Below are positions 11,859-54,805 of a stretch of 64,000 nucleotides of DNA, piece by piece. Under the pieces are notes generated by a model. The model was given only the letters and a program-made list of their open reading frames with translations. It searched no databases and had not been told where the DNA came from. The stretch is taken from the IMG/VR virus record IMGVR_UViG_3300029983_000007, positions 266,209 to 330,208 of that record; one strand, given 5' to 3'. The position numbers were made by a program, and so were the translations under genes. The stretch's first letter is position 1, and every line of letters begins with the position of its first letter.

Positions 11859-12169
11859 AATATATAAAAACATTTGAAAAATTAGATAGAAAAATAAAAA
11901 AAGGAGATTATGCTATAATCGATTTTAAAACAACTAATCCTGGAGTTACAGAATTTTTTCAAAATAATATTAGTAAAATTATCGAAGTAAGAGGAATATG
12001 GATTAAATTTGGTTATAAATATGTACCAGAAGAAATCAAGGAATATTTTTATAAATCTAGAGTATATTATATATATCAAATAGAGTTAAACTTAGAAGAT
12101 GTTTACTCTTATGCTATCTCAAAAGAAAAATTAGAATTAGAATTATCAACAAAAAAATTCAACATATGA
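11855..12169 (+). CDS. Dual-tag small protein, GDY subfamily
   Basis: MKYIKTFE, KGDYA, TKKFNI. Confidence 0.8.
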   Translation: MKYIKTFEKLDRKIKKGDYAIIDFKTTNPGVTEFFQNNISKIIEVRGIWIKFGYKYVPEEIKEYFYKSRVYYIYQIELNLEDVYSYAISKEKLELELSTKKFNI

Positions 12170-12744
12170 AATATATAAAAACATTTGAATTATCAACTTT
12201 TTATGATGAAAAAGATATATTTTGGTATATCCATAATATTAATTTACCTAAAATTAAAGAATTAGTATCTGAAATACCTAATATTAATCTTAATATTAAA
12301 GATAGTACTGGTGAAACACCTTTGCTTCAGTCAGTTAGGTTTAGTTTATATAACGTGTTTAAATTTTTGATAGAATCAGGAGCAGATGTAAATTGTACAT
12401 GTACTAATGGAGTCACTCCATTGATGATAGCAGCAAGAAATAAAAAAGAAGAATTTGTTCAAGATTTAATAGATGCTCACGCAGATTTGAATATTAAAAA
12501 TGATGACGGCGAAACTGCATTAATTATGATTTCTAGCTACACAGATAAAAAGGCTTTTAAAATAATTGAAAACTTAATTGAAAGTGGTGCAGATTGGAAT
12601 ATATCTGATAATTATAATAATACTTTTTTGATGCATTTACAACCTGCATATATGAAAAAAATAATAGAAAAATATCCAGATAAATATGAAGAATTTATTA
12701 AAGAATATAATTTTAAAAATGATATAAAAAAATTCAATTTATGA
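12166..12744 (+). CDS. Dual-tag ankyrin-repeat protein
   Basis: GETPLL, GVTPLMIAA, GETALIM, LIESGAD repeats; IKKFNL. Confidence 0.9.
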   Translation: MKYIKTFELSTFYDEKDIFWYIHNINLPKIKELVSEIPNINLNIKDSTGETPLLQSVRFSLYNVFKFLIESGADVNCTCTNGVTPLMIAARNKKEEFVQDLIDAHADLNIKNDDGETALIMISSYTDKKAFKIIENLIESGADWNISDNYNNTFLMHLQPAYMKKIIEKYPDKYEEFIKEYNFKNDIKKFNL

Positions 12745-13142: not shown

Positions 13143-13612
13143 AACACATTAAAACGTTTGAAAATGCATTCACTGACATATTTAAAAAAAGGAAGAAATT
13201 ACCTCACGAAGTTATTAATTTTGGTGATGTATTAACTAAATTTATAGAGAAAAATATTGATATGGAATGGGATGTTTATTCAAATACATATGAAAGTAGT
13301 AATAAAAAATATTATGATGTTGTAAGAATTTTTATTGACCCACATGATATAGATGATGCTGCTGAAGTTTTGGAATTGCATTATAATTATGATAGAAATT
13401 CTATTTTATATTGTTACCATCCAATAATGAATTTTATGGAAGATATTAAAGACTATTTAGGAAATATTGTAAAGAATAGTTCTATTGAAGATGTTTCATC
13501 TGCTGGAGATAATAGATATTGGATACCACTAGATAAATTACCTGAAATAATAAATAAAATAAATAGCTCTGATTTTGATTATTATAAGTCGACAAAAAAA
13601 TTTAACATATGA
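13139..13612 (+). CDS. Dual-tag protein
   Basis: MKHIKTFE ... TKKFNI. Confidence 0.8.
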   Translation: MKHIKTFENAFTDIFKKRKKLPHEVINFGDVLTKFIEKNIDMEWDVYSNTYESSNKKYYDVVRIFIDPHDIDDAAEVLELHYNYDRNSILYCYHPIMNFMEDIKDYLGNIVKNSSIEDVSSAGDNRYWIPLDKLPEIINKINSSDFDYYKSTKKFNI

Positions 13613-13986
13613 AATATATAAAAAAATTTGAACGTAAAAAGAATGAATTTTATACAATTAAAAATGAATTAATTAATGCTGTATATCATGGTAATTATTC
13701 TAAAACTAAAAAATTATTAGATTCTGGCTTTGATGTTAATAGTAATATAGATGGAAGAAATTCTGCATTATTATATGCTTCTTATAAAGGAGAATGGAAT
13801 ATTTTATTTCTAATATTAAAATATAATCCTGATTGGTACATAAAAGATATTTCAAAATATGATTTTATTGACTATATAAATGATCATATAGATGGAGATA
13901 AAGTAATAGAAAAAATAACAAAAAAATATCCTGTTAAATACAATGAGTATTTAATGATAAAAAAATCAGAAAAATTTAATTTATAA
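13609..13986 (+). CDS. Dual-tag ankyrin-repeat protein
   Basis: LINAVYHG, LLDSGFDVN, GRNSALLYA; SEKFNL. Confidence 0.85.
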   Translation: MKYIKKFERKKNEFYTIKNELINAVYHGNYSKTKKLLDSGFDVNSNIDGRNSALLYASYKGEWNILFLILKYNPDWYIKDISKYDFIDYINDHIDGDKVIEKITKKYPVKYNEYLMIKKSEKFNL

Positions 13987-13988
13987 AT

Positions 13989-14294
13989 ATGAAAGTAGAA
14001 AAATTTAATGAGCATAATTTTACAACATTTGATGATGATATTGTATATGCAGGTAAATCTAAATACCCAGTAGGCACCAAAATTAAATTTAAAGATGATG
14101 GTGAGTATTTAACTGGTACTTTGACACATCCATTTGGTTATGGTGATGTTGGTGTATTCTTAGATGAAAAAGGTAAATATAAATATGATAGGGTATCACT
14201 AAAAAACAATGAATATACAGTAATTGATGATGATGTTGATAAATTCATTAAAGATCACAATTTCAAAAAAGATATAAAAAAATTCAATTTATAA
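13989..14294 (+). CDS. Dual-tag protein (variant N-terminus MKVEKFNE)
   Basis: Ends IKKFNL. Confidence 0.8.
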   Translation: MKVEKFNEHNFTTFDDDIVYAGKSKYPVGTKIKFKDDGEYLTGTLTHPFGYGDVGVFLDEKGKYKYDRVSLKNNEYTVIDDDVDKFIKDHNFKKDIKKFNL

Positions 14295-14340
14295 GTGAAA
14301 TAGCTTATAACTTATGTTTATAAGTGAAATAGCTTATAAC
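14289..14340. repeat. Two tandem copies of a 23-nt self-complementary hairpin
   Basis: TTATAAG-TGAAATAG-CTTATAA-C at 14289 and 14318. Confidence 0.85.
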
Positions 14341-14341
14341 G

Positions 14342-14382
14342 AAAAAATCCTATCTAATTTTTCAATTAGATAGGATTTTTTT
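14342..14382. terminator. Bidirectional intrinsic terminator
   Basis: AAAAAATCCTATCTAATT/AATTAGATAGGATTTTTT. Confidence 0.85.
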
Positions 14383-14387
14383 TAATA

Positions 14388-14519
14388 TTGCTTGAGAATA
14401 CAGCATTATAGAGAAGAACTTTAGAAACTATTATTTTTTTCTCACTAACATTTGAATTAGTATTCTTCTAATACAATCTAAGAAATAATTAAACTTCTTT
14501 TGTTGTTAGATAGTTCGGT
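14388..14519 (-). ncRNA. Degenerate stand-alone copy of the 3' module of the large ncRNA
   Basis: Shares TAACAACAAAAG and AATAATA..TT.TAA..TTCTTCT.TATAA....ATT.CTCA blocks with 14725-14870; both abut a terminator. Confidence 0.5.
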
Positions 14520-14675
14520 AAAATGATAAAAAATAATTAAATTCATTAAATTTTAATTAATATTTTACTTTTTTTTCTTCATTCATAGAGGATCTAATGG
14601 ATTTACTCTCCTGAAGCGTTAATTTGGGTGAACTCAACCCTATTTTAATATTTTTTTATTAAAAATAAATAAATG

Positions 14676-14715
14676 AAAAAAAACACTACTTAATATTGAA
14701 TTAAGTAGTGTTTTT
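14676..14715. terminator. Intrinsic terminator after large ncRNA
   Basis: AAAAACACTACTTAAT/ATTAAGTAGTGTTTTT. Confidence 0.8.
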
Positions 14716-14724
14716 ATTTGTAAT

Positions 14725-15735
14725 AGGCTGAGAAATATACCTTATACAGAAGAATCTTAAAAAGTTATTATTGTTTCTACTTTCTTTCCACTAATATTGG
14801 TTTCCCTAACATTAGTAATTCTCAATGACAGTCAATTAGATTAACTAATCCTTTTGTTGTTAATTACTCTCTCAGTACTTATTACCTATCTAGGTTGCCA
14901 CCCAAACTCAATCTTGCTACAGATTTAAGGAATTTTTCTGAAAATCATGTCAAACTTGGGGTTCTTCACGGCTACGACGATTTTCATCTCATAACTAGTA
15001 GTCACCTTTCATCAACAACAGTCGAACACTTTTCCTTTATTTGTTTTATTTTAATTGTGCATTAAATTTGCAATTTAAAGTTTGTTTTGTGGATAATGAA
15101 AGTAGTGGTTCGACAACCAGCGTCTCCATCTTTTGAACGGAAATATACTAAACTACTCTCTGAGATATCCCTATCTCCATATTTTAAGTCAACTAAGATA
15201 CTCTCATAGCACTTGGTAATGCTAAGGTAACCTTAATAACAGCACCACCTGTACATTGTATTACAATCTAATATTACCTTTCGGTTTTAAGCTAACTCTC
15301 ATAATGGACAACGCAATTATACAACTGGAAATCGTATTTCTTGCAATAATCCTTCAGGTTATTCTTATTGATGTTCCCATCTCACTTAGACTACCCACAT
15401 AGCCTTTGCATTAAACCACTTTCTCTACAGTGTTACCCTCGATAATTAAGGTTTAATGATATCCTGATTGTCTGCTCAAACACTAAATAATGTATTAATA
15501 ACAAATTAACTAACTATTAACTATTCATATTAATGAGTATGTGAAGAATCTTACCGAAGCAAAATCAATTACACACAAAAAAATGTGTCAAATTAATAAT
15601 TGTTGTATCTGTTGATTAATAAATAATTTAATGTCGCAAATATATAGAAACAACTACATATTCACTTTATCCTACTTTCGTAGTTTATTTAATGACTACA
15701 GACAGCCAAATATTTTCAATTTTTACAAAGAACGC
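14725..15735 (-). ncRNA. ~1-kb ornate structured ncRNA, ROOL/GOLLD-like (family unverified)
   Basis: ORF-free and GC-richer; minus-strand GNRA hairpins CTAC-GAAA-GTAG (15672-15683), ACC-GAAA-GGT (15276-15285), GAGATA-GGGA-TATCTC (15162-15177); many other stems; terminator at 3' end. Confidence 0.65.
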
Positions 15736-15899
15736 TTTTAATAAAAAACAAACATTTAGATTGTAGTAAAAATTTATACTATCACTTCTTAACTAAAAGA
15801 AGTTAGTTCTAATAAAAGGAATTAACCTTTTAAACTTGTAAATTAACCATTTTCATAGTTATATATACTAATCAATCTAAATGTGTTGTTTCTTGTTGT

Positions 15900-15919
15900 T
15901 TCAAGTACGTTTACTTGAA
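15900..15919. promoter_or_regulatory. Palindromic operator-like site TTCAAGTA-N4-TACTTGAA (copy 1 of 5)
   Basis: Other copies at 16671, 16981, 17569, 18034. Confidence 0.6.
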
Positions 15920-16039
15920 AAATGACACAAATCTATTTCAGTCCATTTTTTTCTTTTCAGAACTTTTTTCAGTGGAACAATAAACATTTGGTATGTTCAT
16001 TATATTTACTGTTATAATATAAATCCTTAAATTTGTATT

Positions 16040-16565
16040 ACATTTGCAACATTTACTTCTGTAATATTAATCGTACACTTTTGCAAGCTTCAAGTTGGCT
16101 TTTGCCTTTGATTATTTTTATTACTTTTTCAATTTCATTAATATCTAAGTGTGTTTAGTTGCACTATCTCCTTTTGCAAGCTTCAAGGTGGTTTCTGTAC
16201 CATTAGATTTTTCATTGCTTTTACTATCTAAGTGTGTTTAATTGCACTATCTCCTTTTGCAAGCTTCAAGGTGGTTTCTATACCATTAGATTTTCAGTTT
16301 CATTTACAATTTAGTTTATTTCTACATGTGTTCATTTATAGTTATACACCTATTGCAAGCTTCAAGGTGATTTCTGTATCAACATTTTTCATTGTATTTG
16401 AAATATATAAGTGTGTTCATTTGCACTATCTCCTTTTGCAAGCTTCAAGGTGGTTTCTATACCATTATATTTCTCATTGTATAAGCAAGATAATTAATAT
16501 GTAAGTGTGTTCATTTGCACTATCTCCTTTTGCAAGCTTCAAGGTGGTATTTTATACCATTACAT
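16040..16565 (-). repeat. Tandem array of six ~66-nt pseudoknot/three-way-junction RNA units
   Basis: Units at ~16040-16097 (degenerate), 16143-16208, 16226-16291, 16322-16385 (degenerate), 16405-16470, 16499-16565; compensatory changes in three stems. Confidence 0.9.
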
Positions 16566-16612
16566 TTTTCATTGCTTCAATCTGAAATTTGATTTGTTTC
16601 ATTATTGTAGTT

Positions 16613-16644
16613 CAAAATTACAAAAAGTTTTTTGTTTTACCAAA
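16613..16644 (-). promoter_or_regulatory. Bacteroidota-type promoter driving the RNA array
   Basis: Minus strand TTTG-N20-TAATTTTG; palindrome upstream at 16671-16690. Confidence 0.75.
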
Positions 16645-16810
16645 TATTTAATGTTAAAGTTTTGAACTTTTTCAAGTACTCTTACTTGAATGAGTATTAA
16701 AAAACCAAGTCATTTATAAGTTCTGTTAGCTTCTCAGCTTAGAAAAATAAACTTTCATTTGTCATATTTATTCTTGTAACTTTACAAATCTGCGAAATGT
16801 ATTATTATCA

Positions 16811-16877
16811 ATCTAAGTGTGTTCATTTGCACTATCTCCTTTTGCAAGCTTCAAGGTGGTATTTTATACCATTAGAT
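16811..16877 (-). ncRNA. Seventh copy of the 66-nt pseudoknot motif
   Basis: Near-identical to 16499-16565, own promoter at 16921-16952. Confidence 0.8.
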
Positions 16878-16920
16878 TATCTATTAAATCTGATATATGT
16901 TTTGCTTTTTTATTGTAGTT

Positions 16921-16952
16921 CAAAATTACAAAAAGTTTTTTGTTTTACCAAA
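16921..16952 (-). promoter_or_regulatory. Bacteroidota-type promoter
   Basis: TTTG-N20-TAATTTTG. Confidence 0.75.
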
Positions 16953-17072
16953 TATTTAATGTTAAAGTTTGAACTATTTTTTCAAGTACTCCTACTTGTT
17001 TTTGTTATGAATAATAATCAAGGAACTTACTTCTTCTGACAAGTCAGTGTTTCAGTGTTAAAATTAATATTC

Positions 17073-17163
17073 ATAGTGAAGATAGATGGAGTTGAACCCA
17101 GTGTCAGTAACACTTGCCTTCTGCACAATTCGAATCGTGCTGCACCCTGTGTGCTTATCTTCA
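17073..17163 (-). tRNA. tRNA(Sec)-like element with non-canonical anticodon loop
   Basis: 8-bp acceptor TGAAGATA/TATCTTCA, D stem GCAC/GTGC, anticodon arm GCACGA-TTCGAA-TTGTGC (6-nt loop), long variable arm, GTTCAACTCC T-loop; no CCA. Confidence 0.55.
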
Positions 17164-17506
17164 TCATTTTTATAATTTAATCAATAGTCAGTCCTTGTAG
17201 AGAAATAATAGCAGTCAGTCACTGATCATCTGACATTAGGTTCACACATCATCAAAAATTAATTTGATAGGTAATTTCCACGGTGTAGTTACTATTTACA
17301 TTTATAACAAGATAAGTTCTACAGTTCTCATATCTATTTCAATGGACTTTTCATCTTTGATAATTTTCATTATCATTAACTCACCACTATTAGCATCAAA
17401 TTCATCTGGTTCATATATATTTTGTTACAAACATATACACTCTGATTTCAGATATTGCTGATATTTCTTGTTTAAATCTGATTTTTTGATTTAAATTATT
17501 GTAGTA

Positions 17507-17538
17507 CAAATATACAAAAAGTTTTTTGTTTTACCAAA
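17507..17538 (-). promoter_or_regulatory. Bacteroidota-type promoter
   Basis: TTTG-N20-TATATTTG. Confidence 0.7.
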
Positions 17539-17760
17539 TATTTTTTGATATTTTTTCTACATTTTTTACTCAAGTACGTTTACAAGAGTTTTAAAAAATC
17601 AAATCATTTTTCAGTTCTTTTTATCTTCACAGATTAGAAATAACATTTTTTCATTTGTTATATTTACTTCTGTAACATTAAATTTATGTATTTTCAGTTT
17701 CACTATAATCTTGTTCAAGATTAAGGGTGGTTTCCTTACTACTAAATTGTGATTACTTTA

Positions 17761-17826
17761 ATCTAAGTGTGTTCATTTGCACTATCATTCTCTTGCAAGC
17801 TTTGAGAGGTTTTTATACCATTAGAT
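17761..17826 (-). ncRNA. Eighth, divergent copy of the pseudoknot motif
   Basis: Pseudoknot stem CCTT/AAGG replaced by TCTC/GAGA; other stems kept. Confidence 0.8.
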
Positions 17827-17865
17827 TTTTTTCAATCTGAAATTTGATTTGTTTTTATTGTAGTT

Positions 17866-18125
17866 CAAAATTACAAAAAGTTTTTTGTTTTACCAAATAT
17901 TTAATGTTAAAGTTTTGAACTTTTTTTCAATTGAAATTTAATTTTTGTGATTATATTTCTTTTGATATTGTAGTGCAAAATTACAAAAAGTTTTTTGTTT
18001 TACCAAATATTTAATGTTAAAGTTTTGAACTTTTTCAAGTACTCTTACTTGAAGTTTTTTGTTTTTTATTGTAGTACAAAATTAATAAAAGTTTTTGATA
18101 CTACCAAATATTTAATGTTAAAGTT
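17866..18125 (-). promoter_or_regulatory. Three stacked near-identical Bacteroidota-type promoters
   Basis: TAATTTTG elements at 17866, 17976, 18077 within a repeated ~60-nt block. Confidence 0.7.
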
Positions 18126-18131
18126 TCAGTT

Positions 18132-18470
18132 TTAATATACGCATTCATATCCATCTGAATTCTCAAGTGTTTCAATAATTTCCAATAAAAAATCATTAAA
18201 GTTTTTACTTGTATAATCTTTTGAAAAGAAATAATGATATTTTTCTAAAATCTCATCTCCTCTATTATAAAACAATTTTAATTTTGTTGCAGTATCTAAT
18301 GCATCATCTTTTGACATTTCATGAGCCATATCTGCATAGTGCTCATTTTGACAATATTCATTATCTTGAAATTTCGCACCAATTTCTCTACATAAAGTTT
18401 CAATTAGATGTTCTCTATTTATGCTTGTTATAAACTTAATACCACTTTTTGTAATAATAGTTTTACTCAT
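18132..18470 (-). CDS. Hypothetical protein
   Basis: 112-aa ORF behind promoter at 18496-18527. Confidence 0.7.
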   Translation of the reverse strand: MSKTIITKSGIKFITSINREHLIETLCREIGAKFQDNEYCQNEHYADMAHEMSKDDALDTATKLKLFYNRGDEILEKYHYFFSKDYTSKNFNDFLLEIIETLENSDGYECVY

Positions 18471-21089: not shown

Positions 21090-22733
21090 ATGTTAAAATA
21101 TGATGATTATAATAAATTGAATGAGGCTTTCTTTCATCGTAGTAAAGATGAGTTAGAAAATCTCATACATTCATTTAAAAGCTTGATTATAAATCTAAAA
21201 CAATCAATAGATAAAAAATATACATTAGATTTCTATAAAACTCAAATCAAAGAGGATTTAGAATCATATAAAATAAATATATTGAATAATTACAATAAAA
21301 ATACAATTAGTAAATTTAAAGATTTGTTTAAAGAATTTTTAAATAATGTAGATAATGACATAATTAAGCATATGAAATTAGGTAAATTTGCTAATGATAT
21401 ATTAAAGATATATTCTATTAATAATTCTTTTGATATTAACATAAAGAATGTAAATAGTGTGTTTAAAGCTTATCTTGATAATGTTGATAGATATATAGAC
21501 AACACATATGATTTTTTCTACAATAAGATTGAGACTGATAAATCATATGAACCATATAATAAAATTGATATTAAAATAAATAAAGTCCCTATTGATGAAT
21601 ATCAAAAAACAAAATACAAATATCAAATTGAGTTATTAAAATTACAAGAATGGATTACATACAACAATAAAAAAGTATTGATTATATTTGAAGGTAGGGA
21701 TGCTGCAGGAAAAGGTTCAGCGATTAGAAATATCACAAGATTTCTAGATCCAAAGCATTTTAGAGTACAGACATTTGGTATACCTACAGAAGAAGAGAGT
21801 AATAATTGGTTTGATAGATATGAAAAATCTTTACCTAAAAATGGAGAAATTGTTTTTTTTGATAGATCTTGGTATACAAGAGGTTATGTTGAACCAGTGA
21901 TGAAATATTCAACTGAAGATAAATATAATAAATTTATGAAAGAAGTCAATAACTTTGAAGATAAATTAATAGATGATGACATCATACTTATAAAAATATG
22001 GTTCTCCATATCTCAAGATGTACAAAAAATGAGATTTGAATTAAGAAAATCTAATCCATTGAAATACTGGAAGTTTAGTAAGAATGATGAGCAAACATTA
22101 GACAAATGGGATGAATTTACTAAATATATAAATGAGATTTTCAAAAAAACAAATACTAAAGATTCTCCTTGGATAATAATAGATGCTGATGATGAAAATT
22201 ATTCAAGATTAGAATCTTTCAATAGTATAATAAAATCAATAGAAAAAGATAAATCAAACATCAAAGAGGGTGGAATAAAAGTAATATTTGAAGATTTAGA
22301 TGGACCATTAATTCCATATGATAAAAATTCAGATACCGACTATCATAAATTTTTTAATGATCCAGAAAAATGGAGTAAGACTGCTATGAGCAATTTAAAC
22401 AATATTATTGAAAAGACAGAAGCAAAAGTAGTATTATCTTCTTCATATAGAGATGATAAACCATTAAGCGAAATAGAAAAGATGATGAAAACTGCTGGAT
22501 TTAAATATAAAATATATGACGTTGTTCCAAATGACAAATCTAAAAAACGTGGATCTGATATAAAAGATTGGTTAAAGAATAATAAATCAGTTAGTAATTT
22601 TATTATTATTGACGATAATAAGCATGACTTATATGAAGTATTTAGCAAAAAACACATTGTTAAAACTACTCATGAATTAGGAATAACAGATGATATTAAA
22701 GATGAAGCTATTGATAAATTAAATACTAAATGA
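21090..22733 (+). CDS. ppk2: Polyphosphate kinase 2 fused to C-terminal HAD-like domain, with N-terminal extension
   Basis: FEGRDAAGKG Walker A, FDRSWY Walker B, LKYWKFS; C-terminal FEDLDGPL, VVLSSSYR, FIIIDD. Confidence 0.9.
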   Translation: MLKYDDYNKLNEAFFHRSKDELENLIHSFKSLIINLKQSIDKKYTLDFYKTQIKEDLESYKINILNNYNKNTISKFKDLFKEFLNNVDNDIIKHMKLGKFANDILKIYSINNSFDINIKNVNSVFKAYLDNVDRYIDNTYDFFYNKIETDKSYEPYNKIDIKINKVPIDEYQKTKYKYQIELLKLQEWITYNNKKVLIIFEGRDAAGKGSAIRNITRFLDPKHFRVQTFGIPTEEESNNWFDRYEKSLPKNGEIVFFDRSWYTRGYVEPVMKYSTEDKYNKFMKEVNNFEDKLIDDDIILIKIWFSISQDVQKMRFELRKSNPLKYWKFSKNDEQTLDKWDEFTKYINEIFKKTNTKDSPWIIIDADDENYSRLESFNSIIKSIEKDKSNIKEGGIKVIFEDLDGPLIPYDKNSDTDYHKFFNDPEKWSKTAMSNLNNIIEKTEAKVVLSSSYRDDKPLSEIEKMMKTAGFKYKIYDVVPNDKSKKRGSDIKDWLKNNKSVSNFIIIDDNKHDLYEVFSKKHIVKTTHELGITDDIKDEAIDKLNTK

Positions 22734-40626: not shown

Positions 40627-42087
40627 ATGAATAATAGAAACTTCATATTACATATAAAAGAAGATAAATACAAAAAATTATTAATTGATTATATTTTTAA
40701 ATATCGTCAATTCGAAAACTTATATCTTATAATATTAAAAGAGAATAAGGATGATTTTAATTTTTTATCTAATTATAAAGTAATGAGAGCTATTCTTGCG
40801 GAAACTACTGGAGGTAAAGATAAAAATGAAGTTGATTTTATTAGATATAAATATAAAGAAAATGATAAAATGAATGAATTAATTATTTTATCAAAAAGTC
40901 TTAAAATACATAATATTTCAGATTTGATTAAAAGAGTAAAATCAAATTATAAATCTTTTTTCACTAAAATAAGAAATAAAGTTAAAGCCAACGTTCCATG
41001 TACAAAAAAGTTATCACTATTGACTAAATATTCCATTCTAGTTGATAAAATTGCATTTTCAATAAAGAAAAAGGATAAAATTGGAATCAACTTGAGTAAT
41101 AAAATGTTTTATATTGATTTTAAGCATAAAATATTACCAGATAATATACAAAGTCTTAAAGTCGTTTACTCAAATAAAGAAGTTTATTTACATTTTAATT
41201 ACTTGACTGAAGATATATTAAACACAAATAATTCATTAATAAAAGAAGCAGGAATAGATGTAGGTATTAATAATTTATTAGCTATATTTATTGATGATAA
41301 AACATCTAAATCAATAATTGTTGACGGAAATATTTTTAAAACTTATAATTCAAAATTCAACAGGTTCTTGTCTAAACTTAATGAATCAATTTCTAAAGAA
41401 GTCATAGAATTTAAACTCAGTAATACTGGTACTAAATATGCAGTTAAGTGGACTAAAAGAGGAATAGAATTACGTAAATATAAGACATTTATTTATGAAA
41501 AAAGAAATCGTTATTTTTATGATCAATTTCATAAAGTTAGTAAACGTGTGGTTGAATTATTGAAATTAAATTCTGTAAACAATCTAACAATTTCATACAA
41601 TCTAGCTAGATTAAAATATAATGGTGATTGTAAATTAAATAAAAAAGTAAAACAAAATTTCATACAAATTCCTTTCATAAAACTACTAAATTACATTCAA
41701 TATAAAAGTAATGAAGTTGGAATTCAAGTAGATATAATTGATGAATCTTACACATCAAAGTGCTCATGTATTAGTGATAATGTGAATGATCCGTTAGATA
41801 AAGAACTAAATGGTGTTCGTTCTAAAAGAGATTTATTTACTGATAAACTAATAAATAAAACAATGAATGCTGATTTGAACGGTGCTGTCAATCATATAAA
41901 AAAATCAAACAAAAATAATAATTTTTCTTGGTTGGAAAATTATATGTTTAAACTGTGTAATCCAGTTAAAATTAAATGCGACTACGATTTCTTTAAATAT
42001 TTAAAGAATAGTGTGCTCTGGCAAGGAATTTCATCAAAAGAAGTTCAAACGTCACTTCATGTACAAAATTGTACAAGTTTAAGTTGA
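40627..42087 (+). mobile_element. tnpB: Solo TnpB (IS200/IS605/IS607 family RNA-guided nuclease), rearranged RuvC
   Basis: AGIDVGINN (RuvC-I), DESYTSKCS, MNADLNGAVN (RuvC-III); 3' stem-loop CGTCA...TGTACA-AAAT-TGTACA...TGACG at 42050-42089; no TnpA adjacent. Confidence 0.85.
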
Positions 42088-54483: not shown

Positions 54484-54577
54484 AGGAAGAATGACTGGAT
54501 TCGAACCAGTAATAATTTATAATTTTTTACAAATGCTTTTTTGGCTACTAGTTTACCGATTAACTTACATTCTTCTA
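54484..54577 (-). tRNA. tRNA-like gene with collapsed anticodon arm (possibly Leu-derived)
   Basis: Acceptor AAGAATG/CATTCTT, D stem AGTT/AACT, T arm ACTGG-TTCGAAT-CCAGT; anticodon region GCCAAAAAAGC barely pairs; extra 8-bp arm. Confidence 0.6.
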
Positions 54578-54705: not shown

Positions 54706-54805
54706 TAGTTAAGGCGGGACTCGAACCCGCATGAGAAATTAATCTCTGAGATACCTCATTAATAGGATTTTAATCCTAAACGTCTAACCATTTCGTCACC
54801 TAACT
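54706..54805 (-). tRNA. tRNA-Leu(TAA)-like gene with 6-nt anticodon loop and 32-nt variable arm
   Basis: Acceptor AGTTAGG/CTTAACT, D arm ACGAAATGGTTAGACGT, TAGGA-TTAAAA-TCCTA, GCGGG-TTCGAGT-CCCGC. Confidence 0.75.

What the first reader, a model, noticed from the sequence alone, without database searches (positions are those of the whole stretch)
16040..17826. Promoter-driven array of eight ~66-nt RNAs with a covarying H-type pseudoknot: candidate phage RNA decoy, antitoxin mimic or new ribozyme
Seen: minus-strand unit ATCTAA-TGGT(N5-7)ACCA-CCTT-GAAGC-TTGCA-A-AAGG-AGATAG-TGCAA-ATGAACACAC-TTAGAT. Three stems show compensatory changes between copies. Closing stem: ATCTAA/TTAGAT (16143, 16226, 16811, 17761), ATATAA/TTATAT (16405), ATGTAA/TTACAT (16499). 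Hairpin: TGGT/ACCA becomes TGAT/ATCA (16322). Pseudoknot stem: CCTT/AAGG becomes TCTC/GAGA (17761) and ACTT/AAGT (16077). Each block sits just downstream of a host-type promoter, so early, high expression is likely. Known: type III toxin-antitoxin antitoxins (ToxI, AbiQ, CptI, TenpI) are tandem pseudoknot repeats, and phage phiTE escapes ToxIN by expanding pseudo-ToxI repeats. The stem/loop order and the TTGC...AGTGCA bases recall ToxI as I remember it (unverified). Inference: a structured small-RNA array that titrates a host defence protein; a self-cleaving or processing element is the alternative.
Basis: partly seen in the sequence, partly recalled or inferred. Interest (0 to 1): 0.92.

Follow-up and report, generated by a model that had tools for sequence, protein, structure and literature searches.

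The report
New multi-copy phage RNA beside GOLLD
A giant phage of a Bacteroidota-type host carries promoter-driven cassettes that repeat a roughly 67-base folded RNA matching no described RNA family, next to a GOLLD RNA; the RNA is real and new, but its job (most likely a high-dose decoy for some protein) is still a guess.

Summary
The repeat is real. On the minus strand, a covariance model finds six intact 67-68-nt units (88-101 bits) and three divergent copies (45, 42 and 23 bits), not eight equal ones. They sit in three cassettes, each built as Bacteroidota-type promoter, short leader, 1-5 units, conserved 3' tail and U-run. A fourth cassette carries a ~470-nt RNA with a tRNA-like element, and a GOLLD RNA (243 bits) lies just downstream.

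I found the family in only four related phage lineages: 19 intact units, 18 distinct. Compensatory changes support the closing stem P1 (C-G/A-U/G-C) and P3 (two covarying pairs). P2 has no covariation among intact copies. The second pseudoknot stem (UUGCA/UGCAA) always pairs but never covaries, and a small alternative hairpin fits equally well. So "covarying pseudoknot" is only half shown.

There is no Rfam match, including ToxI, tRNA and known ribozymes. No toxin gene, host copy or isolate-phage match was found. The ToxI resemblance is not supported.

My best reading, with low confidence, is a dosage-amplified trans-acting RNA recognised through its invariant loop core (protein decoy or sponge). 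The rivals are a GOLLD partner, a multimerising RNA or a new ribozyme.

The parts
17866..17897 (-). Bacteroidota-type promoter (TTTG-N20-TAATTTTG) of cassette TU1
   Evidence: motif 20 found vs 5.1 expected; part of an 87-nt repeat with 7 copies
17761..17827 (-). Intact unit (TU1); P3 is UCUC/GAGA
   Evidence: 87.9 bits. The orthologous units in three other lineages carry ACUC/GAGU, CCUU/GAGG and UCUC/GAGA
17682..17748 (-). Divergent copy V1, apparently decaying
   Evidence: 42 bits; only 58% invariant columns across three lineages, against 88-90% for intact units
17592..17681 (-). 3' tail module of TU1: hairpin AUCU-GUGA-AGAT (17623-17634), conserved GAACUGAAAAUGAUUUG, then a U-run (17592-17597)
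   Evidence: The GNRA-hairpin stem covaries between cassettes and lineages: AGCU-GAGA-AGCU, UUCU-GAAA-AGAA, GCU-GUGA-AGC
17507..17538 (-). Promoter of cassette TU2
17030..17500 (-). TU2 cargo: ~470-nt conserved RNA with a tRNA-like element at 17077-17162. It is a neighbour in the same island, not a unit
   Evidence: cloverleaf with GGTTCAAYTCC T-arm and 5 compensated pairs; not called by ARAGORN or Rfam
16921..16952 (-). Promoter of cassette TU3
16811..16878 (-). Intact unit (TU3, single copy)
   Evidence: 96.7 bits; 90% invariant columns across three lineages
16699..16810 (-). TU3 linker and tail (hairpin AGCU-GAGA-AGCU at 16728-16739; U-run at 16699-16704)
16613..16644 (-). Promoter of cassette TU4
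16499..16566 (-). Intact unit; P1 is AUGUAA/UUACAU
   Evidence: 98.7 bits
16405..16471 (-). Intact unit; P1 is AUAUAA/UUAUAU
   Evidence: 99.6 bits
16322..16388 (-). Divergent copy. P2 is compensated (UGAU/AUCA), P3 and the loop are kept, and the 3' pseudoknot strand is lost
   Evidence: 45.5 bits; alignment
16226..16292 (-). Intact unit
   Evidence: 101.4 bits
16143..16209 (-). Intact unit
   Evidence: 100.8 bits
16049..16115 (-). Terminal variant V2: hairpin GGC-AAAA-GCC, P3 ACUU/AAGU and the invariant loop GAAGCUUGCAA, with no P1 and no local 3' partner
   Evidence: 23 bits; 87% invariant columns in three lineages. P3 is CCUU/AAGG in lineages b and d. In lineage d the hairpin is replaced by CAUGAGC-UACG-GCUGAUG
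15918..16048 (-). TU4 tail (hairpin UUCU-GAAA-AGAA at 15951-15962; U-run at 15918-15922)
14725..15160 (-). GOLLD RNA, conserved 3' domain. The 5' domain probably reaches about 15750, and a strong terminator lies at 14679-14715
   Evidence: 243 bits vs a gathering score of 150; terminator; 5' part conserved in lineages b and d

Best explanation
SHOWN. These are RNA genes. A lineage-restricted family of ~67-nt RNAs folds into a three-way junction. P1 is a 6-bp closing stem, P2 a short variable hairpin and P3 a 4-bp stem. P3 carries an almost invariant 11-nt loop, (G/A)AAGCUUGC(A/G)A. Its UUGCA can pair with an invariant UGCAA 8-11 nt downstream, which would give an H-type pseudoknot. The units lie in three cassettes with the same build: a promoter fitting the Bacteroidota primary-sigma consensus, a ~30-45-nt leader, 1-5 units, a structured tail with a GNRA hairpin, and a U-run. 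These cassettes sit in a 4-kb ORF-free island that also encodes GOLLD.

INFERRED. Host RNA polymerase transcribes the cassettes early and strongly. Copy number in the main cassette has changed between lineages (1, 3, 4 and 4-5 intact units), so dosage appears to be the variable under selection. The RNA then most likely acts in trans and stoichiometrically. A protein, host or phage, recognises the invariant loop/pseudoknot core, and many copies titrate or load it (a decoy or sponge). P1 insulates each unit so that it folds independently. Which protein is involved is unknown.

My confidence that this is a real, new structured RNA family is about 0.85. My confidence in the decoy/sponge mechanism is about 0.3.
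For: Repeat and model.

Strand and transcription signals: for the promoters and for the conserved leader, tail and U-run. U.G pairs occur only on the minus-strand reading (P3 UG in 2 units, S2 GU in 2 units).

Structure. Across 18 distinct units from 4 lineages, 97.7% of cells are paired, against 32-45% when partners are slid. The covariation score is 0.122 against 0.051 in shuffles (0/500 reach it). P1 pair 6-71 is CG14/AU3/GC1. P3 pairs are CG15/UA2/AU1 and UA13/CG3/UG2. RNAalifold recovers P1, P2 and P3 on its own. At the orthologous TU1 unit, P3 differs compensatorily between lineages.

Constraint. Units have 88-90% invariant columns, like the promoter (87-88%). Tails and linkers have 72-82% and the decaying copy V1 has 58%. 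16 of 32 unpaired columns are invariant and are concentrated in the loop and pseudoknot region. V2 keeps P3 and the loop through four lineages even though its hairpin was replaced.

Dosage. Copy number varies per lineage.

Not protein coding. Periods of 83, 94 and 96 nt are not all multiples of 3, and the ATG inside the unit is not conserved.
Against: There is no expression data, so promoters and terminators are motif matches only. No binding partner is known.

The four lineages share 85-91% identity in this region. The covariation therefore rests on perhaps 7-8 independent events, and linkage to GOLLD counts as one event.

Predicted folding energies are weak (-7 to -12 kcal/mol) and no better than shuffles (z from -1.1 to +0.9).

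Pseudoknot stem S2 has no compensatory change. Three divergent copies lack its 3' strand, yet two of them keep the loop. The loop may therefore be read by something other than the intramolecular partner.

A decoy is the default guess for any multi-copy phage RNA. Nothing here points specifically to defence.
Confidence: 0.32

Rival explanations
1. GOLLD companion or tRNA surrogate. The units occupy the place that tRNAs hold beside GOLLD in other phages. On this reading they are small stable RNAs co-expressed with GOLLD, serving as cargo or partner of the GOLLD nanocage.
For: The units lie 0.9-3 kb upstream of GOLLD on the same strand in all four lineages. In 40 other GOLLD loci, 21 carry tRNAs, often a tRNA-Met at a fixed distance from the GOLLD core. 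The literature reports GOLLD near tRNA islands and proposes tRNA cargo (10.1101/2024.12.08.627333). The same island has a true tRNA-like element in TU2.
Against: The four lineages are close relatives, so the linkage counts as one event. 100 other GOLLD loci (986 kb) contain no unit at E<=1. The unit has no T-loop, no tRNA score in Rfam and no ARAGORN call. No significant complementarity to GOLLD was found.
Confidence: 0.15
2. Multimerising RNA. The loop holds two overlapping 6-nt palindromes (AAGCUU and UUGCAA). The UUGCA/UGCAA pairing would then be intermolecular (kissing or 'hand in hand', as in phi29 pRNA or the GOLLD/ROOL interfaces), building dimers, rings or chains.
For: The palindromes are invariant in all 19 intact units, and also in the variant copies that lack the intramolecular partner (16322 and V2). 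The neighbouring GOLLD is known to assemble through RNA-RNA contacts.
Against: There is no test of dimerisation. The loop lengths (L1 5 nt, L3 6-9 nt) allow an ordinary intramolecular H-type pseudoknot. The palindrome argument is post hoc.
Confidence: 0.12
3. New self-cleaving or self-processing ribozyme that cuts the polycistronic transcript into monomers.
For: The fold is compact, closed by a stem, and has many invariant unpaired nucleotides (RAAGC, AUAG, AACAC). The units are arranged in tandem. Small ribozymes are common in phage ncRNA regions (my own knowledge).
Against: No Rfam ribozyme model matches at E<=10. Two of the six units are solitary, so nothing needs separating there. There is no conserved candidate scissile site at the P1 base, and the flanks vary.
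Confidence: 0.08
4. Type III antitoxin mimic (pseudo-ToxI-like) that neutralises a host ToxN/AbiQ/CptN/TenpN-type endoribonuclease.
For: Repeated RNA with a possible H-type pseudoknot. There is a precedent in phage phiTE (PMC3475682).
Against: No ToxI Rfam hit. The unit is about twice as long, is closed by P1 rather than flanked by single-stranded tails, is spaced by linkers and is sometimes solitary (PMC5086642). No similar array was found in 185,579 genomes by exact pattern. Type III systems are reported mainly from Firmicutes, Fusobacteria and Proteobacteria.
Confidence: 0.04
5. DNA-level element (iterons, partition or operator sites, or restriction-site decoys) rather than RNA.
For: Inverted repeats and palindromes (AAGCTT, TTGCAA) in an AT-rich, ORF-free region.
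Against: U.G pairs fit only one transcribed strand. An oriented promoter, leader, tail and U-run architecture flanks every block. AAGCTT is not avoided elsewhere in the window (12 found vs about 16 expected). Three nested stems that each keep pairing are not expected of protein-binding sites.
Confidence: 0.04

Closest known systems
Type III toxin-antitoxin antitoxin RNAs (ToxI, CptI, TenpI, antiQ) and the phage pseudo-ToxI of phiTE (PMC5086642, PMC3475682)
   Same: Repeated small RNA units. A possible H-type pseudoknot with an A-rich third loop. There is a phage precedent for RNA mimicry whose effect depends on repeat number.
   Different: The units are 67 nt rather than about 34-45 nt. Each is enclosed by a closing stem and carries an extra hairpin, instead of having single-stranded tails. 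The units are separated by 16-29-nt linkers or stand alone. There is no toxin gene, no Rfam ToxI match and no host counterpart.
tRNA islands and tRNAs linked to GOLLD/ROOL in phages (10.1101/2024.12.08.627333)
   Same: Arrays of ~70-nt RNAs, each closed by a terminal stem, sit on the same strand next to GOLLD. The overall outline is a multi-branch junction.
   Different: The unit has no T-loop, no anticodon arm and no tRNA model score. The units are paralogues of one sequence, not a set of different tRNAs. They are absent from 100 other GOLLD loci.
RNA anti-CRISPRs (Racrs; PMC10651486)
   Same: Phage-encoded, promoter-driven small RNAs with no ORF, acting by mimicry. They occur as solitary or repeated units.
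   Different: Racrs copy a host CRISPR repeat (about 28-37 nt). Here the unit is longer, and the only repeat-like part (P1) varies freely by covariation, so its sequence is not what is recognised. The host repeats are unknown.
Protein-sponge RNAs with repeated binding modules (CsrB/RsmZ type; own knowledge)
   Same: Many copies of one small structured module on a transcript. Copy number sets the titration capacity.
   Different: In those RNAs the modules are simple GGA hairpins and the partner is known. Here each module is a 67-nt junction and the partner is unknown.
phi29 pRNA (own knowledge)
   Same: A phage RNA whose loop-to-loop complementarity could be intermolecular and drive ring formation.
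   Different: There is no sequence or architecture similarity, no link to packaging genes, and multimerisation has not been tested here.

Membership tests
Type III TA antitoxin / pseudo-ToxI | Head-to-tail tandem array of short (~34-45 nt) repeats | tested here: not met
   Units are 67-68 nt with a start-to-start spacing of 83-96 nt and 16-29-nt linkers. Two units are solitary.
Type III TA antitoxin / pseudo-ToxI | Array followed by a Rho-independent terminator and a ToxN/AbiQ/CptN/TenpN toxin gene (or, for a phage mimic, similarity to a host array) | tested here: not met
   Only further RNA cassettes and GOLLD lie downstream. The region 14300-18100 has no plausible ORF, and the neighbouring ORFs that were scanned show no toxin family. 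The genome scan gave one chance hit inside a coding sequence. That scan used an exact pattern only, so the host-array part is weak.
Type III TA antitoxin / pseudo-ToxI | Match to the ToxI covariance model | tested here: not met
   No hit at E<=10 in the 5.5-kb or 451-nt searches of Rfam 15.
Type III TA antitoxin / pseudo-ToxI | Monomer folds as an H-type pseudoknot with single-stranded tails that bind the toxin | tested here: inconclusive
   S1 (P3) covaries. S2 pairs in 100% of cells but has no double change. The fold is enclosed by P1, so there are no free tails.
tRNA / tRNA-like structure | Cloverleaf with a T-loop, scored by tRNA models | tested here: not met
   ARAGORN gives no call. The Rfam tRNA model gives no hit at E<=10. 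The 3' hairpin loop CAAAUGAA is not a T-loop.
Known small self-cleaving ribozymes (hammerhead, twister, twister-sister, pistol, hatchet, HDV-like) | Match to the family covariance model | tested here: not met
   No hit at E<=10.
Self-cleaving ribozyme (new class) | Site-specific self-scission in vitro | not testable with these tools
   Needs in-vitro transcription and cleavage assays.
RNA anti-CRISPR (Racr) | Sequence and structure mimic of the host's CRISPR repeat | not tested
   The host and its repeats are unknown. P1 resembles a Cas12a handle stem only loosely (from memory), and its third pair varies freely (CG/AU/GC), which argues against sequence-specific mimicry.
GOLLD-linked small RNA (tRNA-island type) | Recurrent co-location with GOLLD across independent lineages | tested here: inconclusive
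   Present beside GOLLD in 4 of 4 lineages that have the unit. Those lineages are close relatives, and 100 other GOLLD loci lack it.
Structured RNA gene (general) | Compensatory base changes that keep stems, on one strand, with transcription signals | tested here: met
   P1 and P3 covary. U.G pairs fit the minus strand. The promoter, leader, tail and U-run architecture is present.

The most novel reading that the evidence does not exclude
The units are a new class of phage effector RNA. One version is an RNA-only anti-defence decoy that titrates a host immune nuclease or a signalling ligand through the invariant pseudoknot core. The other is a multimerising partner or cargo RNA that works with the GOLLD nanocage encoded next to it. 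Either version would give the first functional handle on a phage ncRNA island that contains GOLLD.
Probability: 0.3. Interest if true: 0.85.

Novelty: categorically new. Interest (0 to 1): 0.64.

Why it matters
GOLLD is one of the largest bacterial and phage RNAs, and no function is known for it. Here it sits in a compact island where host-type promoters drive a second, unknown, multi-copy structured RNA and a third RNA with a tRNA-like end. This is a natural system in which several phage ncRNAs could be studied together.

If the units are decoys, they would add an RNA-based counter-defence outside the two known cases, pseudo-ToxI and Racrs. If they bind GOLLD or multimerise, they would speak to what RNA nanocages are for.

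The cassettes themselves (promoter, leader, cargo, structured tail) also look like a modular RNA expression device for Bacteroidota.

Tried and rejected
- **Rfam.** Searches at gathering score and at E<=10 on 64 kb, 5.5 kb and 451 nt gave nothing for the units.
- **tRNA finder.** Nothing in the island.
- **Isolate phages.** blastn against INPHARED found no match.
- **Pattern scans.** Three unit patterns in IMG/VR, one in JGI metagenomes and one in GTDB genomes returned only the same three lineages plus chance singletons.
- **Wasted scan.** One GOLLD pattern had the wrong gap length and found nothing. The corrected scan is.
- **DUF7768/DUF4406 gene as a synteny anchor.** It mostly led to unrelated phages without units. 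One relative (L055) has 15 tRNAs downstream of it, but I give this little weight.
- **Clade-specific 175-aa neighbour.** It has only 8 relatives, and their contigs stop short of the island.
- **Mini-ORF or Shine-Dalgarno reading.** AAGGAG-N9-ATG inside the unit is rejected because neither the ATG nor the AAGG is conserved.
- **Repeat-protein reading.** Rejected because the periods are not multiples of 3.
- **Cas12a-handle resemblance of P1 (from memory).** Rejected because P1 covaries freely.
- **Restriction-site idea.** Rejected because AAGCTT is not depleted elsewhere.
- **Complementarity to GOLLD, TU2 or the tail.** Not better than shuffles, and the method is crude.
- **Thermodynamics.** The P3-only and S2-only hairpins have about equal energy, so energy does not decide between pseudoknot and alternative.
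Full report
**1. What is there**

Window 14300-18100 has no ORF of note. On its minus strand it holds a series of RNA cassettes.

A 67-68-nt direct repeat is found at eight places by simple repeat search. Its core pattern occurs 6 times, against 0 in 100 shuffles. I built a covariance model from 16 copies and ran it without filters over all 64 kb. It finds copies only here.
- Six intact units score 88-101 bits: 16143-16209, 16226-16292, 16405-16471, 16499-16566, 16811-16878 and 17761-17827.
- Three divergent copies score lower: 16322-16388 (45 bits), 17682-17748 (42 bits) and 16049-16115 (23 bits).

The units are spaced by 16-29-nt linkers, not joined head to tail.

**2. Cassette architecture**

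The Bacteroidota primary-sigma promoter consensus is TTTG, about 19-21 nt, then TAnnTTTG (my own knowledge of Bacteroides and Flavobacterium promoters). It occurs 20 times in the window against 5.1 expected. Seven of these matches cluster on the minus strand between 16613 and 18527. They are the core of an 87-nt repeat.

Four of the promoters head cassettes with a common leader (AAAUCAAAUUUCAGAUU-like).
- TU1 carries unit 17761 and the decaying copy V1.
- TU2 carries a ~470-nt RNA, not a unit.
- TU3 carries unit 16811.
- TU4 carries four intact units, the 16322 variant and the terminal variant V2.

TU1, TU3 and TU4 end in a conserved tail. The tail holds a GNRA-loop hairpin whose stem covaries: AUCU-GUGA-AGAU, AGCU-GAGA-AGCU, UUCU-GAAA-AGAA, and GCU-GUGA-AGC in a relative. 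A U-run and a strong 8-bp hairpin follow.

The sigma-70 scan is not informative here. None of this is expression data.

**3. Neighbours**

Rfam finds a full-length GOLLD 3' domain at 14725-15160 on the same strand (243 bits against a gathering score of 150). A 16-bp terminator follows directly after it. GOLLD is a phage and prophage RNA of unknown function that forms 14-mer cages and often lies near tRNA islands (10.1101/2024.12.08.627333).

The protein genes around the island give no functional hint. They are ankyrin-repeat proteins, a DUF7768/DUF4406 nucleoside-deoxyribosyltransferase-like protein, a PPK2 fused to a HAD domain of the 'Swiss-army-knife' RNA-repair type, and unknowns.

**4. 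Distribution**

Three different unit patterns in IMG/VR, one in JGI metagenomes and one in 185,579 genomes returned only three related phage lineages, plus chance singletons.
- Lineage a is the window, a 330-kb contig.
- Lineage b comprises contigs of about 180-350 kb.
- Lineage c comprises contigs of about 113-177 kb.

A fourth lineage, d, came from a protein look-up. It is a 47-kb contig with the same gene order and its own GOLLD.

Several other searches found nothing.
- 100 other GOLLD loci (986 kb) contain no unit.
- 32 phages sharing the DUF7768 gene contain none.
- INPHARED has no match.

The clade is small. A neighbouring 175-aa protein has only eight relatives among 5.8 billion proteins.

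**5. Structure**

I counted pairs on 19 intact units (18 distinct) from the four lineages.
- P1 is 99% paired. One pair appears as C-G (14), A-U (3) and G-C (1).
- P3 is 100% paired. Two pairs covary: C-G 15 / U-A 2 / A-U 1, and U-A 13 / C-G 3 / U-G 2.
- P2 is 90% paired. It shows only mismatches and no compensation.

The covariation score is 0.122 against 0.051 in shuffles (0 of 500 reach it). Sliding the partners drops pairing to 32-45%. RNAalifold recovers P1, P2 and P3 on its own.

At the orthologous TU1 unit, P3 reads UCUC/GAGA (a, d), ACUC/GAGU (b) and CCUU/GAGG (c). This is true compensatory evolution. The U.G pairs fit only the minus-strand RNA.

The variants add support. The 16322 copy compensates P2 (UGAU/AUCA). 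V2 keeps a hairpin whose sequence is entirely replaced in lineage d (GGC-AAAA-GCC against CAUGAGC-UACG-GCUGAUG). V2's P3 also switches between ACUU/AAGU and CCUU/AAGG.

**6. The pseudoknot**

What would make the fold a pseudoknot is UUGCA in the P3 loop pairing with UGCAA 8-11 nt downstream. That pairing holds in all units, but with three invariant pairs and two one-sided changes to G.U, and no double change. A nested 3-bp GUG/CAC hairpin is equally compatible. Energies do not decide either: the P3-only and S2-only hairpins each come to about -2.3 to -2.7 kcal/mol.

Two points favour S2. The UGCAA is invariant while the three bases after it vary. The loop lengths (5, 1 and 6-9 nt) also suit an H-type knot.

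Two points count against S2 being the whole story. The 16322 copy and V2 have lost the 3' strand yet keep the loop intact. The loop also contains two overlapping 6-nt palindromes, AAGCUU and UUGCAA. The loop may therefore be read by a protein or by another RNA copy.

Overall stability is low and no better than shuffles.

**7. Constraint**

Across lineages a-c, units have 88-90% invariant columns. The promoter has 87-88%, tails and linkers 72-82%, V2 87% and V1 58%. Half of the unpaired columns are invariant, and they are concentrated around the loop and the segment before P1.

The number of intact units in TU4 is 4 in a, 3 in b, 4 in c and 1 in d. Copy number is therefore labile.

**8. What it is not**

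- It is not ToxI, a tRNA or any known ribozyme or riboswitch in Rfam 15 at E<=10.
- It is not coding. The periods are not all multiples of 3, and the internal ATG and AAGGAG are not conserved.
- It is not a restriction-site trap. AAGCTT occurs 12 times outside the array against about 16 expected.
- Type III antitoxins are defined by short head-to-tail repeats, then a terminator, then a toxin gene, with a knot flanked by free tails (PMC5086642). The first three features are not met here, and the knot is inconclusive.

**9. Mechanism**

Shown: this is a new structured RNA family in modular cassettes driven by host-type promoters, inside a GOLLD island.

Inferred: early and high transcription, action in trans, dosage set by copy number, and recognition through the invariant loop core. 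I commit to a protein decoy or sponge as the most likely single mechanism (about 0.3). I rank the other readings as follows.
- GOLLD partner or tRNA surrogate: 0.15
- Kissing-loop multimer: 0.12
- New ribozyme: 0.08
- Type III antitoxin mimic: 0.04
- DNA-level element: 0.04

The remainder is 'something else'.

**10. Novelty and verdict**

The family matches nothing described and I cannot assign it to any known kind, so I rate it categorically new as an RNA family. Two caveats apply. The function is unknown, and the evidence base is four close lineages.

Interest is 0.64. The feature is real, unusual and well placed next to GOLLD, but it has a narrow distribution, half-proven structure and no functional evidence.

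Noticed in passing
window 14725-15160 (-), probably extending to about 15750; also 14390-14491 (-): Full GOLLD RNA (243 bits), followed by a 16-bp terminator at 14679-14715. A second, weak hit to GOLLD model positions 306-415 (30.8 bits, E 2e-05) lies 230 nt further downstream and may be a remnant of a duplicated 3' end.
   Followed up: partly
window 17030-17500 (-), tRNA-like part at 17077-17162: Cassette TU2 encodes a ~470-nt RNA conserved in lineages a, b and d. Its 3' part folds as a cloverleaf with an 8-bp acceptor, a 4-bp D-arm and a GGTTCAAYTCC T-arm. The 'anticodon' arm is replaced by different long hairpins in each lineage. ARAGORN and Rfam miss it. It could be a 3'-end processing signal or a new large RNA.
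   Followed up: partly
window 17844-18141 (-), and L004 990-1620: Promoter modules occur in tandem with almost nothing between them: three in a row here and about six in lineage b. Some are followed at once by the 8-bp hairpin. These are either very short transcripts or a promoter array of unknown purpose.
   Followed up: no
window 17592-17681, 16699-16810 and 15918-16048 (-): A conserved 3' tail module is shared by three cassettes. It has a GNRA-loop hairpin with a covarying stem and the motif GRACUGAAAUGAUUUG before the U-run. It may be a structured terminator or stabiliser, or an RNA motif of its own.
   Followed up: partly
window, whole: GATC is strongly under-represented (57 found against about 179 expected from a first-order model), while other 4-6-nt palindromes are near expectation. 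This suggests avoidance of a GATC-specific restriction system. G+C content is 23.7%.
   Followed up: no
window 54486-54574 and 54706-54805 (-): Two over-long tRNA hits (89 and 100 nt). ARAGORN calls only the first, as tRNA-Phe with the unusual anticodon AAA. They may contain introns or be atypical tRNAs.
   Followed up: no
window 40627-42087 (+): A 486-aa ORF has OrfB_IS605 and Cas12f1-like TNB domains, making it a TnpB-type RNA-guided nuclease or transposon protein inside the phage.
   Followed up: no
window 21090-22733 (+): A polyphosphate kinase 2 is fused to a HAD domain of the 'Swiss-army-knife' RNA-repair type. It is conserved and syntenic in lineage d. Several ankyrin-repeat proteins flank the island (12166-12744, 13609-13986).
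   Followed up: no
GOLLD loci L205, L212, L216, L262 and L221, L222, L248, L253: In other phage GOLLD loci a tRNA-Met sits at one of two fixed distances from the GOLLD core motif on the same strand: about 685 nt upstream or about 265 nt downstream. This clade has no tRNA in either place.
   Followed up: partly
window 14288-14311 and 14317-14340: A perfect 24-nt direct repeat (TTTATAAGTGAAATAGCTTATAAC) with 29-nt spacing lies at the downstream edge of the island, next to a terminator-like hairpin at about 14340-14383.
   Followed up: no
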